Below are positions 14,066 to 46,100 of a DNA stretch of 64,000 nt, piece by piece. Where the stretch lies: contig NW_003314289.1 of NCBI RefSeq assembly GCF_000143415.4, positions 474,072 to 538,071 on the forward strand. Reading direction: 5' to 3'. This DNA is from Selaginella moellendorffii. Lineage: Eukaryota > Plantae > Lycopodiophyta. The translations under genes and the position numbers were made by a program. Numbering within the stretch: the stretch's first letter is position 1; the number at the start of each line of letters is the position of its first letter. A model generated the notes under the pieces. That model was not told the origin of the DNA. It saw nothing but the letters and a program-made list of their open reading frames with translations, and ran no database searches.

Positions 14066-14986
14066 AGAGGAAGCCCCGANNNNNNNNNNNNNNNNNNNNN
14101 NNNNNNNNNNNNNNNNNNNNNNNNNNNNNNNNNNNNNNNNNNNNNNNNNNNNNNNNNNNNNNNNNNNNNNNNNNNNNNNTACGGTTTCCTCGAAATGGTT
14201 TTAGAAGTGTCTTCCAGATCGAGTATAACCATCTTGGATTGGAAGAAGAATGCGAGTGTAAATTCAAGGCAAAGTGCTGCCATGATAAGTTCTCATTTCG
14301 AAGCATAAGAATTGCTTATGATTGCCTAGGATGCATACCATACTGGTTTGTGACGACTTTTTCTTTCGCTTTAAGCTTGATAGTCTTTGAGGAATTCGTT
14401 TCTTTCTTTTTTCTCTAGGTACTTTTGTACGAAATCACTCATAGAAGCAGGCATTCTAATCATCTGGCACTTGACAAGGTACATTTTCTCGTTCCTTTTT
14501 CGTGACTTCTTTGAAGTGTAAGAACGCGACTTGGTAGATGATAATTCTGGAGTAGAAACACTACGGCTTTAAATTCGAAGGTATGTTTCTCTTATATAAA
14601 AACCAATGCGACTTTAGTGCGAACTTGTCTCTATCCCGGAGAACAGCAAACGTGACCTCGTGTTTTCGTGGCTGTCACGACTTAAGAGGAGAGATTCGCA
14701 AAGTGCCAGGTGGAAGTGATAAGCATAAGGTTCTCAAACGCAATAAACAAAAGCAAAAAGGCTCCTTCGTTATGCTGATAGTGATCTCGTTTCATTGTCA
14801 CGCAGACGTGAGTGCTAATCCAAGTGAGATGTCAATGGAGCATCATGGACCGCAATGGCGTGTCTGTCATTGCGAGAACCACGACTTTTGGTAAGTTTGT
14901 TGCAACAGTCTCGCTGGATTCTTTCTTTTTTGTATCCTTCCAACAGGAACACTCCCGTGATTTACAAAAAATCGTAACGAAGAGGC

Positions 14987-16570: not shown

Positions 16571-17527
16571 TCACCAATTTTTATATTGTATGCAAAGGTC
16601 TCCTAGAATAATATATATGACGAAACCTATGATAAACTTCTGGAAAATACTAGTGACTTTTTCTTCTTTGACAATAGGTACTACCTCTTTTTCCTCAATA
16701 TCTTGCGGTTTCACTCTAAAATACATTGATTTTAAAGCTTGTGCCGCTGTAAGCCTTTTATCTGGATCCCAAGCGAGCAAACCCTGTAACAAATTCACTG
16801 CATCCTTATCTTCAATTTTCATAGACCAATCCTTCTCAGGTAGCTTCTTCATCTTGTCCATCACCTTTGCCTCGTCTTCCTCCCAGCTCAAATTGTAATT
16901 TCTATAACCACCAAAAGGCTTCTTTCCCAAGAGTAGCACTGCAAACACCACTCCAGCACCCCACATGTCCACACCTTTCCCAAACTTCTCAATCTCTTTG
17001 GAGATAACTTCGGGAGCCCTGAATCCCAATGATCCAATATGTACGGTTGGTGGAGTTGAGAGCTTCCTCGCACAGCCAAAATCCCCCAATTTCACCACAA
17101 AGTTGTTGCTATTGAGCTCAAATTTGAGACACTCGGGTAGGATGTCCTGATGCACAACTTCTCGCTCATGCAAGCTTGCCAAACCCACTAGGAGCTGCCG
17201 CATGGTTTCCTTAATCCAACCCACTTTGGAGAGCTTGTAACGCAGTCGCTCATCCTTATTGAATTCCCTGATATCCCATAGGTGCTCGAGAACTATGTAA
17301 CCTCCATCTTCTTCCTGGACCATGTCGAGAACTTTCACGACGTTCTCATGCTTGCACTCCCTCATGAGTTCAAACTCTCGGACATAGTCATACAATTCAT
17401 TGTCCACGCTCTTGATTAAAACTTTCTCACCTTCTTGATCACAGGCCACTCTCAGCACACAACCCAGCTTGCCAACCTTTTGCTCGTCATTGCAAAAACT
17501 ATATTTCCCCAGTACCTTCGACTCCAT
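16571..17527 (-). CDS. Intronless atypical CMGC-like protein kinase or pseudokinase with C-terminal hydrophobic segment
   Basis: VLIK, RE, HENVV, HQDILPECL, KLGDFG, FRAPE, DMWGAG and KRLTAAQAL. First ATG at 17527, TATA-like sequence upstream. Confidence 0.8.
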   Translation of the reverse strand: MESKVLGKYSFCNDEQKVGKLGCVLRVACDQEGEKVLIKSVDNELYDYVREFELMRECKHENVVKVLDMVQEEDGGYIVLEHLWDIREFNKDERLRYKLSKVGWIKETMRQLLVGLASLHEREVVHQDILPECLKFELNSNNFVVKLGDFGCARKLSTPPTVHIGSLGFRAPEVISKEIEKFGKGVDMWGAGVVFAVLLLGKKPFGGYRNYNLSWEEDEAKVMDKMKKLPEKDWSMKIEDKDAVNLLQGLLAWDPDKRLTAAQALKSMYFRVKPQDIEEKEVVPIVKEEKVTSIFQKFIIGFVIYIILGDLCIQYKNW

Positions 17528-18667
17528 GACAGAAGCCCTAGCTTGATTCCTAAACACTACTTTATATAGTTTCAACTCAAAAGGTTTTCTATCCTTTTCC
17601 TAATTCAGCTAGCTGAAAATATTTAGAAAATAAAGATTGAGGGTTTAGCTACCCTGACACAAACACACTCAAGGGTGCAAATTCCAATAAGTTATGGTCA
17701 CAAATCCTATCGCTCTTCCCACTTCGCTGGCTTTGATAACAGCTGCGTATCCATTGTAGCATGGGAGAACTTTGGGCTTGATCGATTAAAGTCGCAGTGT
17801 TTCTACTCCAGAATTATCATCGACCAAGTCGCAGTGTTCTTACATTTCAAAGAAGTACCGAAGAAGGAAAGAGAAAATGCACTTTGTCAAGTACCAGATG
17901 ATTAGATTGCCTGCTTCGAACTATCGCTATGTGTGATTTCATTACTTAGACTGCGAGCTTGCACAACTCACAGTCGCTTCTAAGCACCTGGCGCGAGCCA
18001 CAAGAGAAAGAGTTATAGAAACGAAAGAACATCCAAAGAAGACACACCATGAAGAAGCCAAATGTCCGATAACAGCAGTTACTTGTTCTAGCCTTGAAAG
18101 AAGATGGCGACGTAGAGAATCGTTTACGAAGGTTCGCTGTTGAAGAATACACAAAACAGGAGAAAGGAAGTCAGTACCATTTCTTTCTCTTGTCCGGAAT
18201 GCCCCGATGCTTGGAGCCTCTAGCGGCGAGAACCACCAGACTGGATCGAGCTTCTCGACAAGGAAAATCGAGCTATAAGTAGCATGAGTTCTCTAGCAAC
18301 AATGTTTACGTTGAAAGAGAACCTTTTTTATATTTTACCTGTGGATCACGGCCAATACCAGCAGCAGCAGCTACGTGCTCAGAGTGTAAGCTGCTGACTT
18401 CCATGCGCAAGAATCGTTGGTTCATCTCTACGTGATGGACCCTACGTGAGGGTTCTCACTTGAAGCTCATCAAGGCAAAGAGCTCGTGATTCACTGCCGG
18501 GATGTGGCCAACTGGGACACTGAGCCCAAGATACGAATGCTTTTGCGGGAGTTTTAATCACTTATCTATTTTGATGGTTTAATCTTCCTTACATCTGTGC
18601 GAAAGTGTTGCCGCGAGAAGCAATAGTGTTATAACCTCTCAGATAAAAACTCCTATTGTTTCTAACA

Positions 18668-35690: not shown

Positions 35691-36427
35691 AGTGTCCAGA
35701 TAGCATATTGTTGCTAAGAACCACCAAGTAATCTCTATATATAACACCTGGAAGATTGTTGTGACTGAAATGCAATGTCTCAAGCTCACGGCACTCGCCA
35801 ATTGTTGCTAGTATCCTGCCTCAAGATTGTTACCCCAAAGGATGATGTTGAAGCTTTGAAAGTCTGTCCCATATATCCACTGGAGGTGACCCCGTCACAA
35901 AATTGATACGCAGATCGAGCATTTCTAAGTTACCACAGTTCATGGCTAAGTTTAAAACAGGACCACGCAACCTGTTGTATAAAGACTGAAGTCTGGAATT
36001 TGAAAGACGTCTGCGTGAACATGTTGCAGCTCAAGTCTGTAAAACTGTTGTTAGAACCTCTACTTAAAAACTTCAGGTAAACTTTGATTGGCAAATACTA
36101 AGAGAAATTATCTAGATTAGTGCTTGTTTGACAAGTTGAGCACCTTCAAAGCATCACAATCCTTGCAAACAACTGTTCCAGAAATGTTGTTAAGAGAGAC
36201 GTCCAAGTCCTGCAGACTCGTGCAATGCTCAATCCAAAGTTGATAAGAAATTGGACGAAACATCATTGAGAACATTCTCTGTCATATTATTTGAAGCCAC
36301 TGAAAGCTCTAGTAGACTCACAAAACATATCTTGAGGGATGCTTCAACCTCTAAAGCTCCAGCATCTGCATGATCATGAAAGACAAGTCTGACAAGAAGT
36401 AGGACAATAAAAGTAGCATGGATCCAT
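35690..36427 (-). pseudogene. Eroded paralogue of the LRR receptor-like gene at 40364-42608
   Basis: Collinear pieces match 41270-42608 (e.g. gatgttgaagctttgaaagtctg, gcaccttcaaagcatcacaatcctt, and the MDP start). Confidence 0.85.
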
Positions 36428-37408: not shown

Positions 37409-38718
37409 ATGGGTGCTGTGGAGCACAGGGCATACGCGCGCATTGGCCTGCTGGGGAATCCGAGCGATGGCTACTACGGCCGCACAATTGCGCTCGCGAT
37501 CTCGAATTTCTGGGCGACGGTGTCGCTCCAGCCGTCGGATTTGCTCGCGCTTGTGCCGCATTCCCACCACGATCTCTGCCGCTTCAGCTCCATCCAGGAT
37601 CTGGTGAGTGGGGATCGCGTCTGAGCTCCAATGTCAGGATTGATTGGAAAATATTTCCAGGTAGGGAGAGTCCAGAGCGAGGGATATTACGGTGGTGTCC
37701 GGCTTCTCACCGCCGCTTGCAAGACATTCCATAGCTATTGCTCGTCTCATGGAATTGATCTACACGATGGAAATTTCACTCTTTCCTATGATACCAACAT
37801 TCCTCGTCAGGTGCTAAAATTCTAGAACTTTTTGTTTTTTTTTTTCTTCTCGAGCTCTATCACTTTGTGTTGCTAGGCAGGCTTATCTGGATCTAGTGCT
37901 CTCGTGTGCGCTACCATGAATTGCCTCATGGATTTTTACAACGTCCGCGATCGCATCCCAGTAGAGGACCGACCGAAAATTGTTCTCAGTGCCGAACTCG
38001 AGCTCGGGATCACGGCTGGTTGCAAGACAGAGTAGCACAAGTCTATGGAGGCCTAGTTTATATGGTTCGTGGCTCTCACTTTTTTATCCTCTCTCTTTTG
38101 AAGTTTATAGAGCAACTTTGGTTCAGGACTTTGACGAGGAACACATGCTGAGAACTGGGAATGGGATTTACAAGCGAATGGATCCTCAACTCCTGCCTCC
38201 ACTGTACGTAATCTACGCACAAAACCCGAGCGACTCTGGCAAAGTTCGTTTTTTGGAAACCATCCACGCGGTTGCTAATGATTTTCTTCCGTTGGTGTAG
38301 GTCCATAGCACGGTGAAGCAGCGATGGCTGGATGGCGATCTGACCGTGAGAACAAAGATGAGGGAAGTAGCGGAGCTGGCTCTCCGAGGCAAACAGGCTT
38401 TGCTGGAAGGAAATCACTCGTTACTGGCCGAGCTTATGGATCGCAACTTTGACCTGCGAAGGTAATGAGAATTGTTTCGAGGTGTCAACCAAAGTAACTC
38501 CTTTCACCAGAGAAATGTTTGGGGACGATGCGCTTGGAGCTCTGAATATCCAGATGGTTGAGACGGCACGAAGCGTCGGAGCGGCATGCAAATTCACTGG
38601 CAGCGGCGGAGCAGTAGTGGCGTTTTGTCCTGAAGGATCTGTCCAAGCTCAAAAGCTCCAAGAAGCTTGCAGCGCTTCTGGGCTTTCTATAGAGCTTGTG
38701 CAAGTTGCGGCGAGGTGA
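37409..38718 (+). CDS. GLCAK: Glucuronokinase (GHMP kinase), with an apparent 1-nt frameshift at about 38020
   Basis: [32 protein letters not shown]|[33 protein letters not shown] and [14 protein letters not shown]. Confidence 0.9.
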
Positions 38719-39170: not shown

Positions 39171-40363
39171 GAATAAGATCAGTGAGAAGATTCATAGGTT
39201 AAATTATCCTTAATCAGATTTGAGGAATAAAGTGAAATTTTTTTCATTCCATATAAAGTGAAAAACTCTTTAAAATGATTACGTTGCATGTATAGCAGTG
39301 TTATTCTTACTTATTAATGCAAAATAAAATTTTATAATTATAAACATGTTTATAATTTATAAACACAAGATTAATCTTATTGTATATGGTAGAATAAAAA
39401 AGAATATACTAGAAAGTGATTAATAAAGTTTATAAATTATAAACATGTTTATAGATTATAAATACAAGATTAATCTAAATGAATAACAAAGAAATCTAAG
39501 CATATTCTATGTATATCCACTACCATCCTCTTATAGGTTTGCTTAAGAAAACCAAAAAGTATGAAAAAAAACTAATACATTAAAATGGATTTACTCAAAA
39601 GGTTAAAATAATTATCTTTGGGTAATTGCTTTATCTGTAATATCACAATTTTGTAAAAGCTAATGTCAAACATTAAGCATGTTCTTGCACAAACTTCCAC
39701 TCATTGGTGACCACTAAAGTCATTGAATCAGTGTGTTCCATAGCATCCCACGAAGCACAAACCTAATGGTCCAAATGGAAGACTACATCACAACCATAGC
39801 TTGCTATAATTCTCTAACTTCATGCAAAAGTTATAATGTGATGATATTTCTGAAGAGCATTAGGATGAATCCTAAGTACAAAAGTAACCTGATTATGTGT
39901 TATAGAGGCAGTGACTAAGCTACTAACACTCCCACTCAGTCTGGGATTGGACTCACTGCTTGGGTGTTGCACAGTCTCCAGTAGCTGGATCTACATATAA
40001 GCTGCATATTTCCACTAGAGTACCTCCATTAGCTGGATAATTGAAAACTCCATTGTCTGGATTTATTTTTTGGGCAAGAGTTAAAGGTTGTTGTGATCAG
40101 CAATAAACTTTTTGGGAGCCAACACCTTTATGGGCAAATCAATTAGCTGCTCATAAGTGGTGCAAAACTGGAGAACAATCATGTATTGTGATATTAATGT
40201 TAAATATGCTTCATCCTACCATGAAACTTAGTCGTCTTGGTCAGAGAAATAGTGGTGATATTACCACAGTAAAGCAGAGTCAGGAAAAGCCAAGGGTAGC
40301 CATACTACCCAAAACATTAAGTCATATTCAAGGTATATCCACTACTATATCAATTACCAATGG

Positions 40364-42608
40364 TTACATAATTTCAAACCGTTTAAGTATTCTCTCCCAT
40401 CTCTTGTTGAAAAAAACTGCACAGCTCCATGCAAGGAATGAAACAACAGCAGCAACAATACCAGCTAACATGCTTACATCTTCATCATCATCCTCGTCAC
40501 CAGAATGATTGTCTAAATTATAATCATTACCATGACATTCTGCAAGCGGGATGCCACATAGTCCTGGATTTCCTTCGTAGCTGCTCGCAGGGAAAGTTGG
40601 AAGCTGCCCACTCTGTGGAATCCCACCAAGAAGCTTGTTGTGTGAGATGTTGAAGTATTTCAGAAAGGTGAGGTTGGTGAGCGAGCCCGGGATGTGTGAT
40701 TCGAGCTGGTTGTATGAGAGATCTAGCCACTCCAGTTCCTTGAGATTGCCAACTGTGGAGGGAACAGCCCCTGTGAGTAAGTTGTGTGCAAGATTCAGCG
40801 AATATAAATTTTGCATAGCACCAAACTCTGCTGGGATTGTTCCTGTGAAGCTGTTGAACGAGAGATCGATACACCAAGGGCTGACTCCCTGAGTATTACT
40901 TGATATTAAATAAATGTTGAAACCGGGAGGTGACAGGAAGTACCAAGTTTGGCATCTGGTTGCAATCGGAAGCTGCTGGAACTCATGGAAACGGATTCCT
41001 TGCAGTATAAACACCTCATTGTAACCTTTGCAGATGGATGGCTGTACGTTGAACAACAGTACCATCAAATAGGGGTACTTTATATCATACTGGTCTTCTT
41101 TAACGGAGCAGCCGATCCAGCTTGGGATTGGTCCCGCCAACTGGTTGTCGTTCACTGCAAGATGAATTAAACTGTTGGTGTTCCTTAACTCGCCTGGTAG
41201 ACCACCTTGAAGCTTGTTATGGCCTAGTAGAAGACCTCGAATGTTCTGCATCTTTGCAAGAGATGCCGGGATTTCTCCAGATAGCATATTGTTGTTAAGA
41301 ACCAGCAAGGACAGATTCTTCAGGCGAGATATCTCCTCCGGTATAACACCTGTAAGATTGTTGTGACTGAGATGCAAGGTCACCAGCTCACTGCACTCGT
41401 CGATTGTCGCTGGTATCCTGCCTTCAAGATTGTTACCCCAAAGGATCAGATGTTGAAGCTTTGAAAGTCTGCTGCATATATTCCCTGGAAGCGACCCTGT
41501 CACAAAATTGATACTCAGATCGAGCATCTTTAAATTGCTACAGTTCATGGCCAAGTTTAAAACCGGACCACGCAACCTGTTGTATACCAACACCAAAGAC
41601 TGAAGTTTAGACTTTGAAAGGCAGATGTTTGTGTTGCTACTACTGAATTTGTTGCAGCTCAAGTCTAGAGCTTCAAGAGTTGGAGGAACTGTAGGTATTT
41701 CACCTGTAAAACTATTGTGGTCGGCTTGAAGAACCTCCAGGGACTTGAAAACCTGAGGTAAACTTCGATTGCCAAATACCGAGAGAAATGGTCCAGAGAA
41801 TTGATTGTCTGACAGGTTGAGCACCTTCAAAGCATCACAATCCTTCCAAAAAACAGTTTCAGAAATATTGTTAAAAGAAACATCCAACTCCTGCAGACTA
41901 GTACACTGCTCAAGCCGAAAGGTTGTTATGAAGTTGGACGAAGCGTTAAGCTTCTGAAGTCTTCTGCAGTTTTTGGACATATTTTCAGGGATCCCTCCAA
42001 CCAGCTGATTGCTCGAGACATCTAGAAACTTCAAGCTCTTGCATGATAAAAAGAAAGAAGAAGGTATTGAACCACTTATTCTGTTGTAGGATAGGTCGAC
42101 AGAAACCATGGAGTTCCCAATCGATAATTTCACTGAAATTTTTCGTAACTTGTTGTGTGAGAGGTTCAAAATCCTGATGCCTTTGCATGTAACCAAACGA
42201 GAAAGAGTGTCGAGAAAATCCCCAGTGAAATGGTTCCCTGACAAGTCAAGGACCTCCAGAGAGCATTCTTGCGAGGAGGATACTTTGATCTCTGTGAAAT
42301 TATTCCCAGAAACAGACAAGTTGCGTAGTTGAGGCAGGGCTTGGATTTGTATAAAACGGAAGAGGGCCTGAAAGTGAGAGATAATTGAGCTGTATACCAG
42401 ATATCTGGCCTGCTTAGGAACAATTGATACCAATCCATTGACAAACGTCTGATTCTCTGTTCCAGCTATTCAGTGACGACAGAGGATCATCCATAGATTT
42501 CTTAAAGCTCAAGAGTGCTTCAGTCTCTAAATCTGCAGCATCTGCATGACCATGAAAAACAAGCCTGATAGCAAGTAGGAAAACAGCAAGTAACCTCCAT
42601 GGATCCAT
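40364..42608 (-). pseudogene. LRR receptor-like protein (island plus four LRRs, acidic juxtamembrane, TM, short tail) with two 5' lesions
   Basis: Signal peptide and LRRNT (EALLSFK..W....C.W.GI.C); TAA at 42416-42414 and a +1 shift near 42355; about 660 open codons of LRRs; GNPGLCG, DEDDDED, TM; no kinase domain. Confidence 0.88.
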
Positions 42609-43689
42609 TCGAATGCAACAGCAGAAATGCTTACAGATGGTTCAAGTCCTTACCATCATATACTGCACGAAATTCCAGCAGGTCAGTCATGGGGCCATAC
42701 TCTCCAGATTTTTATTTCCGCGTGTCTGACGATTGTTCTTTGAAAGCACTTCGCCAAAATGAGTCCTGGCTGTAAACACATATCTTGAGCTTTTTCTTGT
42801 CCTGCTTGACTGCAGGAGTGACTTCATGGGAGAGAATGTGGCCACGGCCACATGACTTTGATCCTGCAGTCAAAGTCAAAGCACTGAAAGAGACAAGGAA
42901 ATTTAGAGATTGCAAAGACCATGACTTGACGATCACGGACTCTGCTTTTCCCAATGAGCTTGTGGAATGCACCTTTATCAATGGTGCCTTGTTAATAATC
43001 ACTTCAATCATAGTTTGCAAAGAGTTCTTGACATTCTTGGTGAAGGTGGCCAAGCCTAAAGCAGAGATGACCGTCCACATGGGCTTTTATACAAATATTC
43101 TCTAAATCTCTTGCTCTCTCTCTAGTGGCTGATGGCTTATAGATGTGGCTTGCATCCCAATGGCTCATGGATATAACTCACATCCCAACAAGTGACCACA
43201 ATGGATCAAGCATGTTTGTCATGTGAAGAGAACCTAGCGGCCTTTAAATGTTTAATGCAATGCCCATGTTAAGAAATTGGAGAAACCAAAATAAAAGAAA
43301 AGGAAGAGGGATAGAGTTTGGAGTTATAATAAAAACCACATAGGGAAAACTATGAGTGCAAACTGAACCCAAGTCCAAAAAGAAAAAGAGGAGAAGACCA
43401 AATAAAATAGCGTGAAAAGTATGAAGTGATCAATGGGAAGAGAAACATAGAGAAGGAATAAGAACTAAAATAAGAGGAACAAATGCTCACTTGGATCACA
43501 GTCTCGTGCGTTCTTGAGCCTTCAGAAAGTTCCTCCAAGTTGCCCAAGCTTACAATGGAAATACAAGAGAGATGTGTGCTCGGAAGTTGTATGAGAGAAA
43601 GCTGTAAATGGTGGGAAAAGGTAGTGGAAGGGACTACAGATGTTAGGACTAACAGTGGTGATGTTGAAATGTTTTGTGCATGTGAACTA

Positions 43690-46100
43690 TTGTTGCAAAT
43701 AATGGTTGCTCCTTTTTGGTGCTAAAGAATGAGATGGCAGGTACACCATCCGTCCACCATGTTTGGGTTCCTGTGTGTGCATCAAATCCAACCGGCTAGG
43801 AAAAATTAGATTTTGAAGTCGAGATTTATTGTGTTTATTCATTTTCGCTGGTCCACTTGGTAATTTAACTTTGGCATGTTTATACATTGTCCTGAATGCC
43901 CAAAGTGCTCTTGTTGCTGGATTCAGCCTACTCATTGGATTGAGGAAAATAGCTGTTGCTACGAACATGTTGAATCTTTAACAGCTAGAAAGAGATCCTC
44001 CACTGTTAGAGATGAGCTCTGTGGGGATGCTGAAGTGACACATGATATGCTCATAGATGAACTTCGTTGTTGTGTACTGATCTACACATCTGAGGGGAAC
44101 GGCCTCAATCCAGTAGTTTGTCACAATGAAGAGGAAGACGTGGGACACTGCTCCTAGGGTTGTGTTGTTGGCATTGTAGACACTATTGTGCATACTCCTT
44201 GGTGTCCTTGAGGATTGTTGGCTAGAAGTAGCCATGTCGAAAGAGTTGTGCTGTCATGCAGCCAGAAAAGTGCCCGACACAAGAACCTGGAGCAAAGCAG
44301 AAATCTCAGTCGCTGTGACACATTGGAGAAGAAGGCCTTGAGCAGTATGATGTGTCAGGGCCTTCTTCTCCATCATACTGCTCTGACACATGGAGGAGGA
44401 GGCATTGAGGACAATAGTCTCGAGTCTGCCACTGCAAAGATTGTTGTTCCAAGTGTGGGAGGTCTGATGGAGAAGTGCTTAACTCCAAATACTTTGCCAT
44501 ATTCTCCAGAGCTGCTGGCACCACAAACGTTGTCACAGCAATTGTGAACTGACTAAGATCGAGTTGGTGCTGAGTTGAAGCTGTTCAAATGCTTACTGCT
44601 ATTTCTCAGTCCACTTATAGGGGGTGTTGTGTTTGAGCAGAGCTACTAGTGGATGAGTGAGAGCAGCAAAATCTAGTATGAACCATGGAAAGAATCCAAT
44701 CTAGCCAAGGTAACTCTGAAGTTGTTTGAGGTTTTCACCTCAAGGATCTGTTTGCACTTGGTGACATGTGCCTTCCAATGAGACATCAAAATTGAGAAGA
44801 CAGCTTTCAGTGACAACGAACTTGCACTTGGCTGGATTCAGTGAAAAATGGTGCTATTGGCAACCTGTAAAGATCTTCTCTAGGTGGTGAAGATGTTCAT
44901 CATAGTTTTTTTAAGAGGTCATCCATGTGTACAGGGAGAGAACTTCCAATCAAGTTGTGGAAGGTGTATGTCATGAAGCGCTGAAAGTTGCCTTGGCATT
45001 GTATAAACCAAACGGTAGGATGTTGTAGGCAAATACTCCATATGGTGTGCAAAAAGCAGTGAGCTTATTGTCTTCTGGATGAATTGGAAGCTGGTTGTAA
45101 CCTGAGAAATCATCCATGAAAGAGTAAAAATGATGTCCTGCCATCTCATCCACAATCCTATCTAAGAAGGGTGTTAGGAAATGATCTCGCATAGTGACAT
45201 TATTGAGAGCCTGGTAGTCAACGTGAAGACAGAGCTTGCTATTGGCTTTACATATTGGGACAACATTGGAAATCCATGTAGAATGTTCCAATGGGTAGAT
45301 GAAATCAGTAGGATGAAACGGTAGGATGTTGTAGGCAAATACTCCGTATGGTGTGCAAAAAGCAGTGAGCTTATTGTCTTCTGGGTGAATTGGAAACTGG
45401 TTGTAGCCTGAGAAATCATCCATAAAAGAGTAAAAATGATGTCCTGCCATCTCATCCACAATCCTATCTAGGAAGGGTGTTGGGAGATGATCTCGCATAG
45501 TGACATTATTGAGAGCCTGGTAGTCAACGTGAAGACAGAGCTTGCTATTGGCTTTACATATTGGGACAACATTGGAAATCCATGTAGAATGTTCCAATGG
45601 GTAGATGAAATCAGTAGGATGAAACGGTAGGATGTTGCAGGCAAATACTCCGTATGGTGTGCAAAAAGCAGTGAGCTTATTGTCTTCTGGGTGAATTGGA
45701 AGCTGGTTGTAGCCTGAGAAATCATCCATAAAAGAGTAAAAATGATGTCCTGCCATCTCATCCACAATCCTATCTAGGAGGGTGTTGGGAGATGATCTCG
45801 CATAGTGACATTATTGAGAGCCTGGTAGTCAACGTGAAGACAGAGCTTGCTATTGGCTTTACATATTGGGACAACATTGGAAATCCATGCAGAGGTAGAT
45901 GAAATCAGCTGCTAGCAGTTTTTGCACTTTGAGTTTAATCGCTGGTAGTAGAGACTTGTTGAGGTGGCGTTGCTTTTGGCATATTGGCTTGGCACCTAGA
46001 ACCAACGTGATTCCATCGGCATGCCTGGAAGTTGTGATAGAAGAACATCTTTGAAACATTGGAGGAGAGACACCAACCTAGCTGCGTCTATGCTCCAAAA
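43690..46100 (-). mobile_element. Degenerate Ty3/gypsy pol (RT, RNase H, integrase)
   Basis: WISNVVP..LHVDYQALN..DHLPTPFLD..SFMDDFSGYNQ..TAFCTPYG..PFGLYNA; integrase remnants TNYWIEAVPL, PTELISN and ALWAFRTMYK. Confidence 0.88.
45010..45908. repeat. About three tandem copies of a 306-bp RT segment
   Basis: Identical landmarks recur 306 nt apart (45311/45617; ORF starts 45155/45461/45767). Confidence 0.95.

What the first reader, a model, noticed from the sequence alone, without database searches (positions are those of the whole stretch)
40364..41480. Kinase-less receptor with a BRI1/BRL-like island domain
The island (about 41120-40875) reads CKGYNEVFILQGIRFHEFQQLPIATRC, paralleling BRL1 CRGAGGLVEFEGIRAERLERLPMVHSC as I recall it, including the Cys pair and GIR. 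It is followed by four LRRs and GQLPTFPASSY..NPGLCGIPL..C. The protein ends as an RLP (acidic juxtamembrane, TM, short tail). Canonical BRI1 is generally considered absent from lycophytes, so this may preserve a link between steroid-receptor ectodomains and immune RLPs.
Basis: partly seen in the sequence, partly recalled or inferred. Interest (0 to 1): 0.75.

Follow-up and report, generated by a model that had tools for sequence, protein, structure and literature searches.

The report
Kinase-less BRI1-like receptor, broken allele
This Selaginella gene encodes a cell-surface protein whose outer part resembles the plant steroid-hormone receptors (BRI1/BRL) but which has no kinase and lacks their key steroid-contact residues; the copy in this window is a broken allele of a gene that is intact on the sister haplotype.

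Summary
The window is Selaginella moellendorffii. On the minus strand, 42608-40364, lies one intronless gene with this layout:
- signal peptide and LRRNT;
- about 18 LRRs;
- an 82-residue island;
- 4 LRRs and a cap;
- a very acidic juxtamembrane stretch, a TM helix and a 14-residue tail.
No kinase lies downstream.

The ectodomain aligns colinearly, island included, only with BRL3, BRL1, BRL2 and BRI1. Trees place the family as sister to fern and seed-plant BRI1/BRL. The island is very divergent: it falls below the Pfam threshold, and the profile-profile match is moderate. Steroid-pocket residues are replaced, including the essential Trp564. The membrane-proximal part looks like that of immune RLPs.

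The window copy carries a nonsense codon (42416-42414) and a 1-bp insertion (42346-42348). The allelic haplotype has an intact 747-codon ORF, and the locus appears transcribed. At least four paralogous loci exist, with dN/dS about 0.32.

Best reading: a lycophyte branch of the BRL family that lost its kinase and works, if at all, as an RLP. It is not an ancestral link or a classical steroid sensor. PSKR and EMS1 outgroups were not available.

The scan reached the same reading before on two other pieces of this genome.

The parts
40364..42608 (-). Whole intronless gene for the kinase-less BRL-like receptor-like protein (SELMODRAFT_415673 / XP_024536190.1 locus). In this window it is the null allele.
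   Evidence: The allelic locus L004:5488-7731 is one intact 747-codon ORF.
42417..42608 (-). Signal peptide plus LRRNT_2 cap (64 codons), cut off by the nonsense codon.
   Evidence: Pfam LRRNT_2 with E 1.3e-13; hydrophobic N-terminus.
42414..42416 (-). Premature TAA codon; the allele and the two paralogous loci aligned (L001, L002) have TCA (Ser).
   Evidence: In one search, contigs of runs X3 and X2 carry the Ser allele, while run X1 carries the stop.
42346..42348 (-). A-run holding one extra A, which causes a frameshift.
   Evidence: The extra base is absent from contigs of X1, X3 and part of X2.
40364..42433 (-). The remaining open frame of 689 codons plus stop. It runs from the LRRs to the tail.
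41120..42404 (-). About 18 plant-type LRRs before the island (BRI1 has 21).
   Evidence: colinear with BRL3 residues 96-453 and onward.
41162..41164 (-). His codon at the position of BRI1 Trp564. The allele has Gln and the paralogs have Gln, Leu or Met.
   Evidence: Alignment A5. W564H in BRI1 lowers binding about 100-fold (bioRxiv 10.1101/2025.08.08.669299).
40874..41119 (-). Island domain, 82 residues.
   Evidence: Pfam Island PF20141 scores 12-13 bits, below the cut-off of 23.6. hhalign to BRL islands gives Prob 82%, or 52% for the core only.
40952..41032 (-). Cys-x25-Cys loop with G at +2, GIR at +11 to +13 and P at +21, the same spacing as in BRI1/BRL.
40532..40873 (-). C3 region: four LRRs, the GQLPT (QxxT) loop, the GNPGLCG cap and the capping Cys.
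   Evidence: C3-only trees.
40472..40531 (-). Strongly acidic extracellular juxtamembrane stretch.
   Evidence: Net acidic charge is +10 here and +9 as the family median; BRI1/BRL score -3 to 0 and canonical RLPs +2.5.
40409..40471 (-). Transmembrane helix with four small-xxx-small motifs.
40364..40408 (-). 14-residue basic cytoplasmic tail and stop codon. No kinase follows.
   Evidence: A related short basic tail (12-17 residues) ends the paralogs too.
42654..42690 (-). Alternative upstream 5' exon, spliced to 42541 in a minor form. It replaces the signal peptide.
   Evidence: Joint 42541>42654 with GT..AG on the minus strand in X1; used by RefSeq model XP_024536190.1.
35692..36233 (-). Fragment of a second family member. 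It covers only the mid-LRR part and is 65-70% identical.
   Evidence: tblastn.

Best explanation
**What it is.** The locus is a Selaginella moellendorffii member of a small, apparently species-restricted family of LRR receptor-like proteins. Their ectodomain descends from the BRI1/BRL lineage: colinear LRRs, an island inserted four LRRs before the membrane, and a conserved Cys loop with GIR.

**What it carries instead of a kinase.** It has a membrane module typical of immune-type RLPs: a very acidic outer juxtamembrane stretch, a TM helix rich in small-xxx-small motifs, and a 12-17 residue tail.

**What is shown.**
- the architecture and the absence of a kinase;
- BRLs as the nearest sampled relatives;
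- replacement of the brassinosteroid-contact residues;
- purifying selection among the paralogs;
- an intact allele on the sister haplotype, probable transcription, and a disabled copy in this window (nonsense codon plus 1-bp insertion).

**What is inferred.**
- The family arose from a BRL-type receptor kinase by loss of the kinase in the lycophyte lineage.
- The intact copies act as surface receptors or co-receptor scaffolds. They would bind an unknown ligand at the island/LRR groove, not brassinolide in the BRI1 manner.
- They would signal through partner kinases: a SERK via the last LRRs, and a SOBIR1-like adaptor via the acidic juxtamembrane stretch and TM.
For: **Identity**
- 100% match to SELMODRAFT_415673.
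- RefSeq names the locus and its allele 'BRI1-like 3'.

**Relationship to BRL**
- A single HMMER domain spans residues 298-638, island included, only with BRL3, BRL1, BRL2 and BRI1.
- 38-42% identity over 343 colinear residues.
- The Cys loop has identical length and motif spacing.
- hhalign of the island against BRL islands: Prob 82%, E 1e-5; core only: 52%, E 1.4e-4. Against canonical RLP islands: 6%.
- The C3-only tree, which excludes the island, puts the family sister to fern and seed-plant BRI1/BRL at 97/87. The 340-column tree gives 100/97.
- Foldseek TM-scores: 0.85-0.89 to BRL3, BRI1 and BRL1; 0.37-0.58 to PSKR1.

**No kinase**
-.
- A short basic tail ends both paralog groups, which are about 65% identical.

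**RLP-like membrane module**
-.

**Selection and integrity**
- dN/dS about 0.32, and 0.17-0.35 in the island.
- Intact ORFs at L001 and L004.

**Transcription**
- RNA-like contigs cover only the gene body and carry GT..AG joints on the gene's strand.

**Null allele**
-.
Against: - The island is below Pfam's Island threshold (12-13 bits against 23.6).
- An island-only profile finds nothing in the PDB.
- An exhaustive search of 1.84 billion representatives with the island profile finds only S. moellendorffii proteins. No intermediate forms link it to BRLs.
- AU tests do not reject a tree that holds the family together with canonical RLPs (p 0.38 and 0.11).
- PSKR, PSY1R, EMS1, NILR1 and bryophyte BRL sequences could not be obtained, so a closer tie to another Xb clade is not excluded by a tree.
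- The island folds with low confidence (pLDDT 58-66 with BRLs in the alignment, about 30 without). The good Foldseek match is therefore partly circular.
- Language-model look-alikes are generic RLP fragments.
- Partner kinases, the ligand and kinase loss itself are inferred, not shown.
- At least two of the copies examined are broken: this one and L002.
Confidence: 0.7

Rival explanations
1. Ancestral link. The family would descend from an RLP-type ancestor of the BRI1/BRL ectodomain that predates fusion to the Xb kinase. It would thus preserve an intermediate between immune RLPs and steroid receptors.
For: - In unrooted trees the family sits between canonical RLPs and BRLs, and AU tests cannot reject grouping it with RLPs.
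- Its juxtamembrane stretch, TM and tail are RLP-like.
- The last 19 island columns weakly resemble the RLP island end.
- PMC10834447 leaves open whether the common ancestor was an RLP or an RLK.
Against: - The rooted ML position mirrors the species tree: lycophyte sister to ferns plus seed plants.
- According to PMC9223546, BRL kinases occur in some mosses. That would make a kinase-bearing ancestor more parsimonious.
- The RLP island motifs Yx8KG and Kx5Y are absent.
- The island type is found in one species only.
Confidence: 0.1
2. Non-canonical steroid sensor or decoy. The intact proteins would still bind a brassinosteroid-like sterol in the island groove. They would then either signal through partner kinases or titrate ligand and SERKs. 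This could be the missing BR receptor of Selaginella.
For: - Selaginella responds to BR, yet no BRI1 homologue is known there (PMC3862569).
- Pocket positions stay mostly hydrophobic (Met, Leu, Phe, Trp, Tyr).
- The BRI1 pocket tolerates many substitutions.
- The QxxT loop used for SERK contact is kept in group A.
Against: - The Trp564 position is His, Gln, Leu or Met. W564H in BRI1 lowers binding about 100-fold and behaves as a null.
- Tyr599 and Tyr642 are not kept, and a PP insertion sits in the loop that bonds the C23 hydroxyl.
- Alleles differ most in the island.
- Group B lacks the T/S of the QxxT loop.
Confidence: 0.08
3. Decaying relic. The whole family would be a set of non-functional remnants of a lost BRL gene, transcribed but without a role.
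For: - The window copy has a stop codon and a frameshift.
- L002 has a 19-bp deletion.
- Fragments occur in the window and in P0121.
- Minor frameshifting or signal-peptide-skipping splice forms exist.
- Allelic dN/dS is 0.64.
Against: - dN/dS is about 0.32 over dS 0.47-0.65 between paralogs.
- The tails and Cys loop are conserved.
- Intact ORFs of 747 and 766 codons exist at L004 and L001.
Confidence: 0.08
4. Not BRL-derived. It would be an ordinary ID+4LRR receptor-like protein, or a relative of PSKR, PSY1R or NILR1, whose island resembles BRL islands by chance or convergence.
For: - The Pfam Island match is sub-threshold and seen in one member only.
- The island-only profile finds no BRL.
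- Other Xb clades were not sampled in the trees.
- Atlas look-alikes are RLPs.
Against: - The match is colinear across 13 LRRs plus the island only with BRLs.
- PSKR1 aligns only over the last LRRs.
- The Cys-loop geometry is identical.
- The C3 tree excludes the island and still groups the family with BRLs.
Confidence: 0.04

Closest known systems
BRI1/BRL brassinosteroid receptor kinases (LRR-RLK subfamily Xb; structures 3RGX, 4J0M, 9S80, 9S9C)
   Same: - Signal peptide, LRRNT and a colinear LRR solenoid.
- An island inserted four LRRs before the membrane.
- A Cys-x25-Cys loop with GIR.
- Conserved fold-type residues: the N602, C609, G620-I621-R622, C635 and G644 positions.
- A cap with a GQxxT loop.
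- 38-42% identity over 343 residues.
   Different: - No kinase.
- About 22 LRRs rather than 25.
- The island fails the Pfam threshold.
- Steroid-contact residues are replaced (W564, Y597, Y599, K601, Y642, M657, F658).
- A very acidic juxtamembrane stretch and a small-xxx-small TM.
LRR-RLP counterparts inside the BRI1/BRL ectodomain clade (Ngou et al. 2024, PMC10834447)
   Same: A kinase-less protein with a BRL-type ectodomain and the ID+4LRR layout.
   Different: - The published cases are described as highly similar to BRL1/BRL3 and as keeping the BR-binding residues.
- This family is deeply divergent and lacks those residues.
- It sits in a lycophyte reported to have no BRL at all.
Canonical immune LRR-RLPs (Cf-9, RLP23, EIX2 and RXEG1 type)
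   Same: - ID+4LRR layout.
- Acidic outer juxtamembrane stretch.
- TM with GxxxG-like motifs.
- Short tail, small paralog clusters, frequent pseudogenes and allelic variation in the island.
   Different: - The island has no Yx8KG or Kx5Y motif and no profile similarity (Prob 6%).
- The ectodomain groups with BRLs in trees.
PSKR1 / PSY1R (Xb peptide receptors) and AtRLP3, the RLP twin of PSY1R
   Same: ID+4LRR layout. The RLP3/PSY1R pair is a precedent for an RLP copy of an Xb ectodomain.
   Different: - PSKR1 aligns only over the last four LRRs, not the island.
- Foldseek TM-score is 0.37-0.58.
- These proteins were not sampled in the trees.

Membership tests
BRI1/BRL receptor family | Colinear LRR ectodomain with an island inserted before the last four LRRs | tested here: met
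   A single HMMER domain spans 298-638 against BRL3 425-760. Alignment A5 is colinear. The layout is 18 LRRs, an island and 4 LRRs.
BRI1/BRL receptor family | Island matches Pfam PF20141 (brassinosteroid receptor island) above the gathering score | tested here: not met
   The window scores 12.4-13.3 bits against a cut-off of 23.6, and 1 of 6 family members matches. True BRI1 and BRL1 score about 109 bits.
BRI1/BRL receptor family | Island homologous to BRL islands by profile-profile comparison | tested here: inconclusive
   hhalign gives Prob 82%, E 1e-5 over 64 columns. Core only gives Prob 52%, E 1.4e-4 over 37 columns. The control against RLP islands gives 6%.
BRI1/BRL receptor family | Cytoplasmic Xb-type Ser/Thr kinase domain | tested here: not met
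   There is no Pkinase hit. There is no tblastn hit downstream in the window, L001 or L002. The ORF stops 14 codons after the TM.
BRI1/BRL receptor family | Brassinosteroid pocket residues (Trp564, Tyr/Phe597, Tyr/Phe599, Tyr642, Met657, Phe681) | tested here: not met
   From A5: W564 becomes H (Q/L/M in relatives), Y597 becomes M, Y599 becomes L/F, Y642 becomes L with a PP insertion, M657 becomes W/L, and F681 becomes Y/N.
BRI1/BRL receptor family | Groups with BRI1/BRL rather than with canonical RLPs or XII kinases in trees | tested here: met
   Support is 97/87 on C3 alone and 100/97 on 340 columns. AU tests do not reject the alternative (p 0.38 and 0.11).
BRI1/BRL receptor family | Monophyly with BRI1/BRL to the exclusion of PSKR, PSY1R, EMS1 and NILR1 | not tested
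   No sequences of those clades could be obtained through the tools. The only indirect evidence is the PDB ranking and the alignment extents.
LRR receptor-like proteins of the ID+4LRR clade | Signal peptide, LRR ectodomain, single TM and short tail without kinase | tested here: met
LRR receptor-like proteins of the ID+4LRR clade | Negatively charged outer juxtamembrane stretch and GxxxG-type TM motifs | tested here: met
   Net acidic charge is +4 to +10, and there are 3-4 small-xxx-small motifs. BRLs score -5 to +2 and have 0-2 motifs. The motifs are Ala/Gly/Ser mixes rather than strict GxxxG.
LRR receptor-like proteins of the ID+4LRR clade | Island with Yx8KG or Kx5Y lysine motifs | tested here: not met
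   There is no match in the window, L004 or L001 islands.
LRR receptor-like proteins of the ID+4LRR clade | QxxT/S loop in the last LRR (SERK contact) | tested here: met
   GQLPT is present in the window and its allele. Group B has AQLAL, without T/S.
LRR receptor-like proteins of the ID+4LRR clade | Constitutive association with SOBIR1 and ligand-dependent recruitment of a SERK | not testable with these tools
   This needs co-immunoprecipitation or ectodomain binding assays.

The most novel reading that the evidence does not exclude
The intact members of this family would be the missing brassinosteroid (or related sterol) sensors of Selaginella. A BRL-type ligand-binding ectodomain would be naturally rewired to an RLP-type membrane module. 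The steroid signal would then enter the cell through SOBIR1- or SERK-type partner kinases instead of a receptor's own kinase.
Probability: 0.06. Interest if true: 0.85.

Novelty: new member of a known kind. Interest (0 to 1): 0.45.

Why it matters
Papers on brassinosteroid receptor evolution state that Selaginella has no BRI1/BRL homologue and no island domain (PMC3862569, PMC9223546, PMC4926431, PMC6744412). Those surveys, as far as the methods read here show, selected candidates by similarity to the full-length receptor kinases or by presence of a kinase domain.

This locus and its paralogs suggest that the BRL ectodomain lineage did reach, or survive in, a lycophyte, but without the kinase and with an RLP-like membrane module. 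This has three consequences:
- It moves the island domain's minimum age back to the ancestor of vascular plants.
- It gives a natural example of the modular swapping between Xb receptors and RLPs proposed by Ngou et al. 2024.
- It offers concrete candidates to test for the unexplained BR responsiveness of Selaginella.

The interest is moderate. The proteins probably do not bind brassinosteroids as BRI1 does, and their function is unknown. RefSeq already labels them BRI1-like, and this particular copy is dead.

Tried and rejected
- **Kinase exon downstream.** tblastn found none. The only kinase-like ORF (16571-17575) is a stand-alone Ser/Thr kinase 23 kb away.
- **An intron that could bypass the stop and frameshift.** By eye on the sequence, the only plausible GT..AG pair (63 nt) does not restore the frame. 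Comparison with paralogs and the allele shows point lesions instead.
- **Island-only searches.** The PDB profile search found nothing. The word-based search of 5.8 billion proteins and the exhaustive search of 1.84 billion representatives found only S. moellendorffii proteins. No bridging or kinase-bearing carriers of this island were found.
- **Structure prediction without BRLs in the alignment.** The island came out at pLDDT about 30, which is useless.
- **Atlas language-model search.** It returned only generic RLP and LRR fragments and did not discriminate.
- **Fetching the locus of P0002.** It was not on record. The allelic locus was reached through P0147 instead.
- **PSKR, PSY1R, EMS1, NILR1 or bryophyte BRL sequences.** None could be obtained. 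The last homology search returned fern and seed-plant BRLs only.
- **Gene models.** The published models P0001, P0002, P0147 and P0148 were rejected as guides to the protein. Each departs from the plain ORF by splicing out the lesions, part of the island, the signal peptide or the TM. The read data show a mostly unspliced transcript.
Full report
**Organism and gene**

The window is Selaginella moellendorffii. The long minus-strand ORF is 100% identical to SELMODRAFT_415673. The same cluster holds RefSeq XP_024536190.1 for this scaffold and XP_024534188.1 for a second scaffold, both named 'BRI1-like 3'.

ORF listing and the sequence itself show two pieces on the minus strand:
- a 64-codon piece (42608-42417) with a signal peptide and a Pfam LRRNT_2 cap;
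- a 689-codon frame (42433-40364).

Pfam finds only LRR families in the long frame and no kinase. The allelic ORF, which has the same layout, is built as follows:
- about 18 LRRs;
- an 82-residue island (41119-40874 in the window);
- four LRRs with a GQLPT loop and a GNPGLCG cap;
- an acidic stretch and a TM helix;
- a 14-residue tail.

**This copy is broken; the allele is not**

DNA alignment with two paralogous loci (L001, L002) shows two lesions private to the window. One is TAA in place of TCA at 42416-42414. The other is an extra A in the run at 42346-42348. All other indels are multiples of three.

The syntenic locus on scaffold GL377587.1 (L004) has the same GHMP-kinase neighbour. It carries an uninterrupted 747-codon ORF with neither lesion. 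Apart from the lesions, the two alleles differ at 1.5% of coding positions.

Public contigs laid on the locus give the following:
- Two runs (X3, X2) have the Ser codon and lack the extra base.
- One RNA-like run (X1) keeps the stop.
- A DNA run holds both forms at the indel.
- The three RNA-like runs cover only 40387-42800 and nothing in 40100-40372, whereas the DNA run covers everything.
- The RNA-like runs contain GT..AG joints on the gene's strand, so the locus is very probably transcribed, mostly unspliced.
- One minor form uses an upstream exon (42690-42654) that replaces the signal peptide.
- Another minor form removes 55 nt inside the island and shifts the frame.

The run kinds are guesses by the tool, and contigs can switch haplotypes.

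**No kinase, and that is the family's normal state**

tblastn with the cytoplasmic parts of a BRL1 and a BRI1 orthologue finds nothing downstream in the window, L001 or L002. The family has two groups that are about 65% identical. Both end in a short basic tail after the TM, related in sequence.

L001 holds an intact 766-codon ORF, while L002 has a 19-bp deletion. A further fragment lies in the window at 35692-36233. Pairwise dN/dS between paralogs is about 0.32, and 0.17-0.35 in the island, at dS 0.47-0.65. The family therefore evolved under constraint, even though individual copies decay.

**Relationship to BRI1/BRL**

- Against PDB sequences, only BRL3, BRL1, BRL2 and BRI1 give one domain running through the LRRs, the island and the last four LRRs. 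For BRL3 this is 223.6 bits, query 298-638 against 425-760. GSO1, FLS2 and PSKR1 match LRR blocks only.
- A 36-sequence alignment is colinear, at 38-42% identity to BRLs.
- The Cys loop is 27 residues in both families, with G at +2, GIR at +11 to +13 and P at +21.
- The island on its own is weak evidence. Pfam Island gives 12-13 bits against a cut-off of 23.6, and only for this member. An island profile finds nothing in the PDB.
- In 1.84 billion representatives the island profile finds only S. moellendorffii proteins.
- Profile-profile comparison with 22 BRL islands gives Prob 82%, E 1e-5.
- Trimmed to the core without LRR edges, it gives Prob 52%, E 1.4e-4.
- The control against canonical RLP islands gives 6%.

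Trees were built twice:
- The last four LRRs alone, which exclude the island, put the Selaginella clade sister to a clade of fern BRL2, seed-plant BRL2, BRL1/3 and BRI1. Support is 97/87, apart from canonical RLPs and XII kinases.
- A 340-column alignment gives 100/97.

This mirrors the species tree. It also fits the published inference that the BRI1/BRL2 split dates to the euphyllophyte ancestor (bioRxiv 10.1101/2024.10.09.617452).

There are three caveats:
- AU tests do not reject holding the family with RLPs (p 0.38 and 0.11).
- PSKR, PSY1R, EMS1, NILR1 and bryophyte BRLs were not available.
- The Selaginella stem is long.

**Structure**

With BRLs in the alignment, the model has pLDDT 83.6. 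The LRRs are above 90, but the island is at 58-66 and its last loop is below 50. With Selaginella sequences alone the island is at about 30.

Foldseek ranks BRL3, BRI1 and BRL1 first (TM 0.85-0.89). PSKR1 scores 0.37-0.58 and RXEG1 0.66-0.73. This is partly circular.

**Pocket residues**

The residue list comes from the BRI1/BRL3 structural study and from PMC9570414. Mapped through alignment A5:

| BRI1 residue | This family |
|---|---|
| Trp564 | His here; Gln in the allele; Gln, Leu or Met in paralogs |
| Tyr597 | Met |
| Tyr599 | Leu or Phe |
| Lys601 | Phe or Ile |
| Tyr642 | Leu, with a two-proline insertion before the Gly644 position |
| Met657 | Trp or Leu |
| Phe658 | Cys or Ala |
| Phe681 | Tyr or Asn |

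In BRI1, W564H lowers brassinolide binding about 100-fold and behaves as a null.

The residues that are kept are those that shape the fold: the two cysteines, GIR, and the N602 and G644 positions. The pattern is that of a retained scaffold with a changed binding surface.

**RLP-like membrane module**

| Feature | This family | BRI1 and BRL1/3 | BRL2 and fern BRLs | Canonical RLPs |
|---|---|---|---|---|
| Net acidic charge between cap and TM (median) | +9 (range 4-10) | -3 | 0 | +2.5 |
| Small-xxx-small motifs in the TM | 3-4 | 0-2 | 0-2 | mostly 3-4 |

Ngou et al. 2024 tie the outer juxtamembrane region of RLP23 to BAK1 recruitment, and GxxxG-type TM motifs to SOBIR1 binding. They also report RLP counterparts inside the BRI1/BRL ectodomain clade and a common origin of ID+4LRR RLPs and Xb kinases (PMC10834447). 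The RLP island lysine motifs are absent here.

**Allelic variation**

Seven of the 15 amino-acid differences between the alleles fall in residues 424-517. That stretch holds the Trp564 position and the island. The binomial probability is about 0.003, but the region was chosen after seeing the data.

**Reading**

The best-supported account is a lycophyte branch of the BRL ectodomain lineage that lost its kinase and carries an RLP-type membrane module. It was maintained by selection in some copies and is dead in this one.

Kinase loss rather than ancestral absence is an inference. It rests on the tree position and on the published presence of BRL kinases in some mosses (PMC9223546).

The literature repeatedly states that Selaginella has no BRI1/BRL homologue. 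These genes probably escaped those surveys because candidates were picked by similarity to full-length receptor kinases; one survey explicitly screened for a kinase domain.

Two earlier notes of this scan, on other pieces of the same genome, reached the same reading. I saw them only after my own analysis.

Noticed in passing
window 35692-36233 (-): Fragment of a second member of the same receptor family. It covers only residues 174-230 and 272-387 and is 65-70% identical. It lies 4 kb downstream on the same strand, beyond the GHMP-kinase gene.
   Followed up: partly
window 40885-40949: Six allelic nucleotide differences fall within 65 nt of the island's last loop, giving four amino-acid changes. 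The same stretch holds a minor 55-nt GT..AG joint (40887>40943) that shifts the frame. This could reflect gene conversion or diversifying selection.
   Followed up: partly
window 42541-42690 (-): A minor transcript form joins an upstream exon (ATG at 42690) to 42541. It replaces the signal peptide with 12 other residues. RefSeq builds its protein model for this locus on that form.
   Followed up: partly
window 40167-40477 (-); P0001, P0147: The JGI model for this locus and the RefSeq model for its allele splice out the TM helix (donor after the acidic stretch) and add 28 unrelated residues. No such joint was seen in the four runs laid.
   Followed up: partly
window 37906-38718 (+); L004:9400-10710: A GHMP-kinase (glucuronokinase-like) gene lies next to the receptor gene, on the opposite strand. 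The L004 haplotype has a GHMP-kinase gene in the same position, which shows that the two loci are allelic.
   Followed up: partly
window 44971-45765 (-): A retrotransposon reverse-transcriptase ORF in which the same segment of about 95 residues is repeated three times in tandem.
   Followed up: no
window 16571-17575 (-): Stand-alone Ser/Thr protein-kinase ORF of 334 codons. It is unrelated to the receptor gene and has only 25% identity to the BRL1 kinase.
   Followed up: no
window about 14080-14180: An assembly gap (run of N) lies inside an ORF listing.
   Followed up: no
L001 (GL377573.1) and scaffold of P0003/P0007/P0009/P0024: Group-B paralogs cluster on two scaffolds. Several annotated models are chimeras or fragments: P0121 is fused to a C2 domain, and P0007 is a tandem fusion of two copies.
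   Followed up: no
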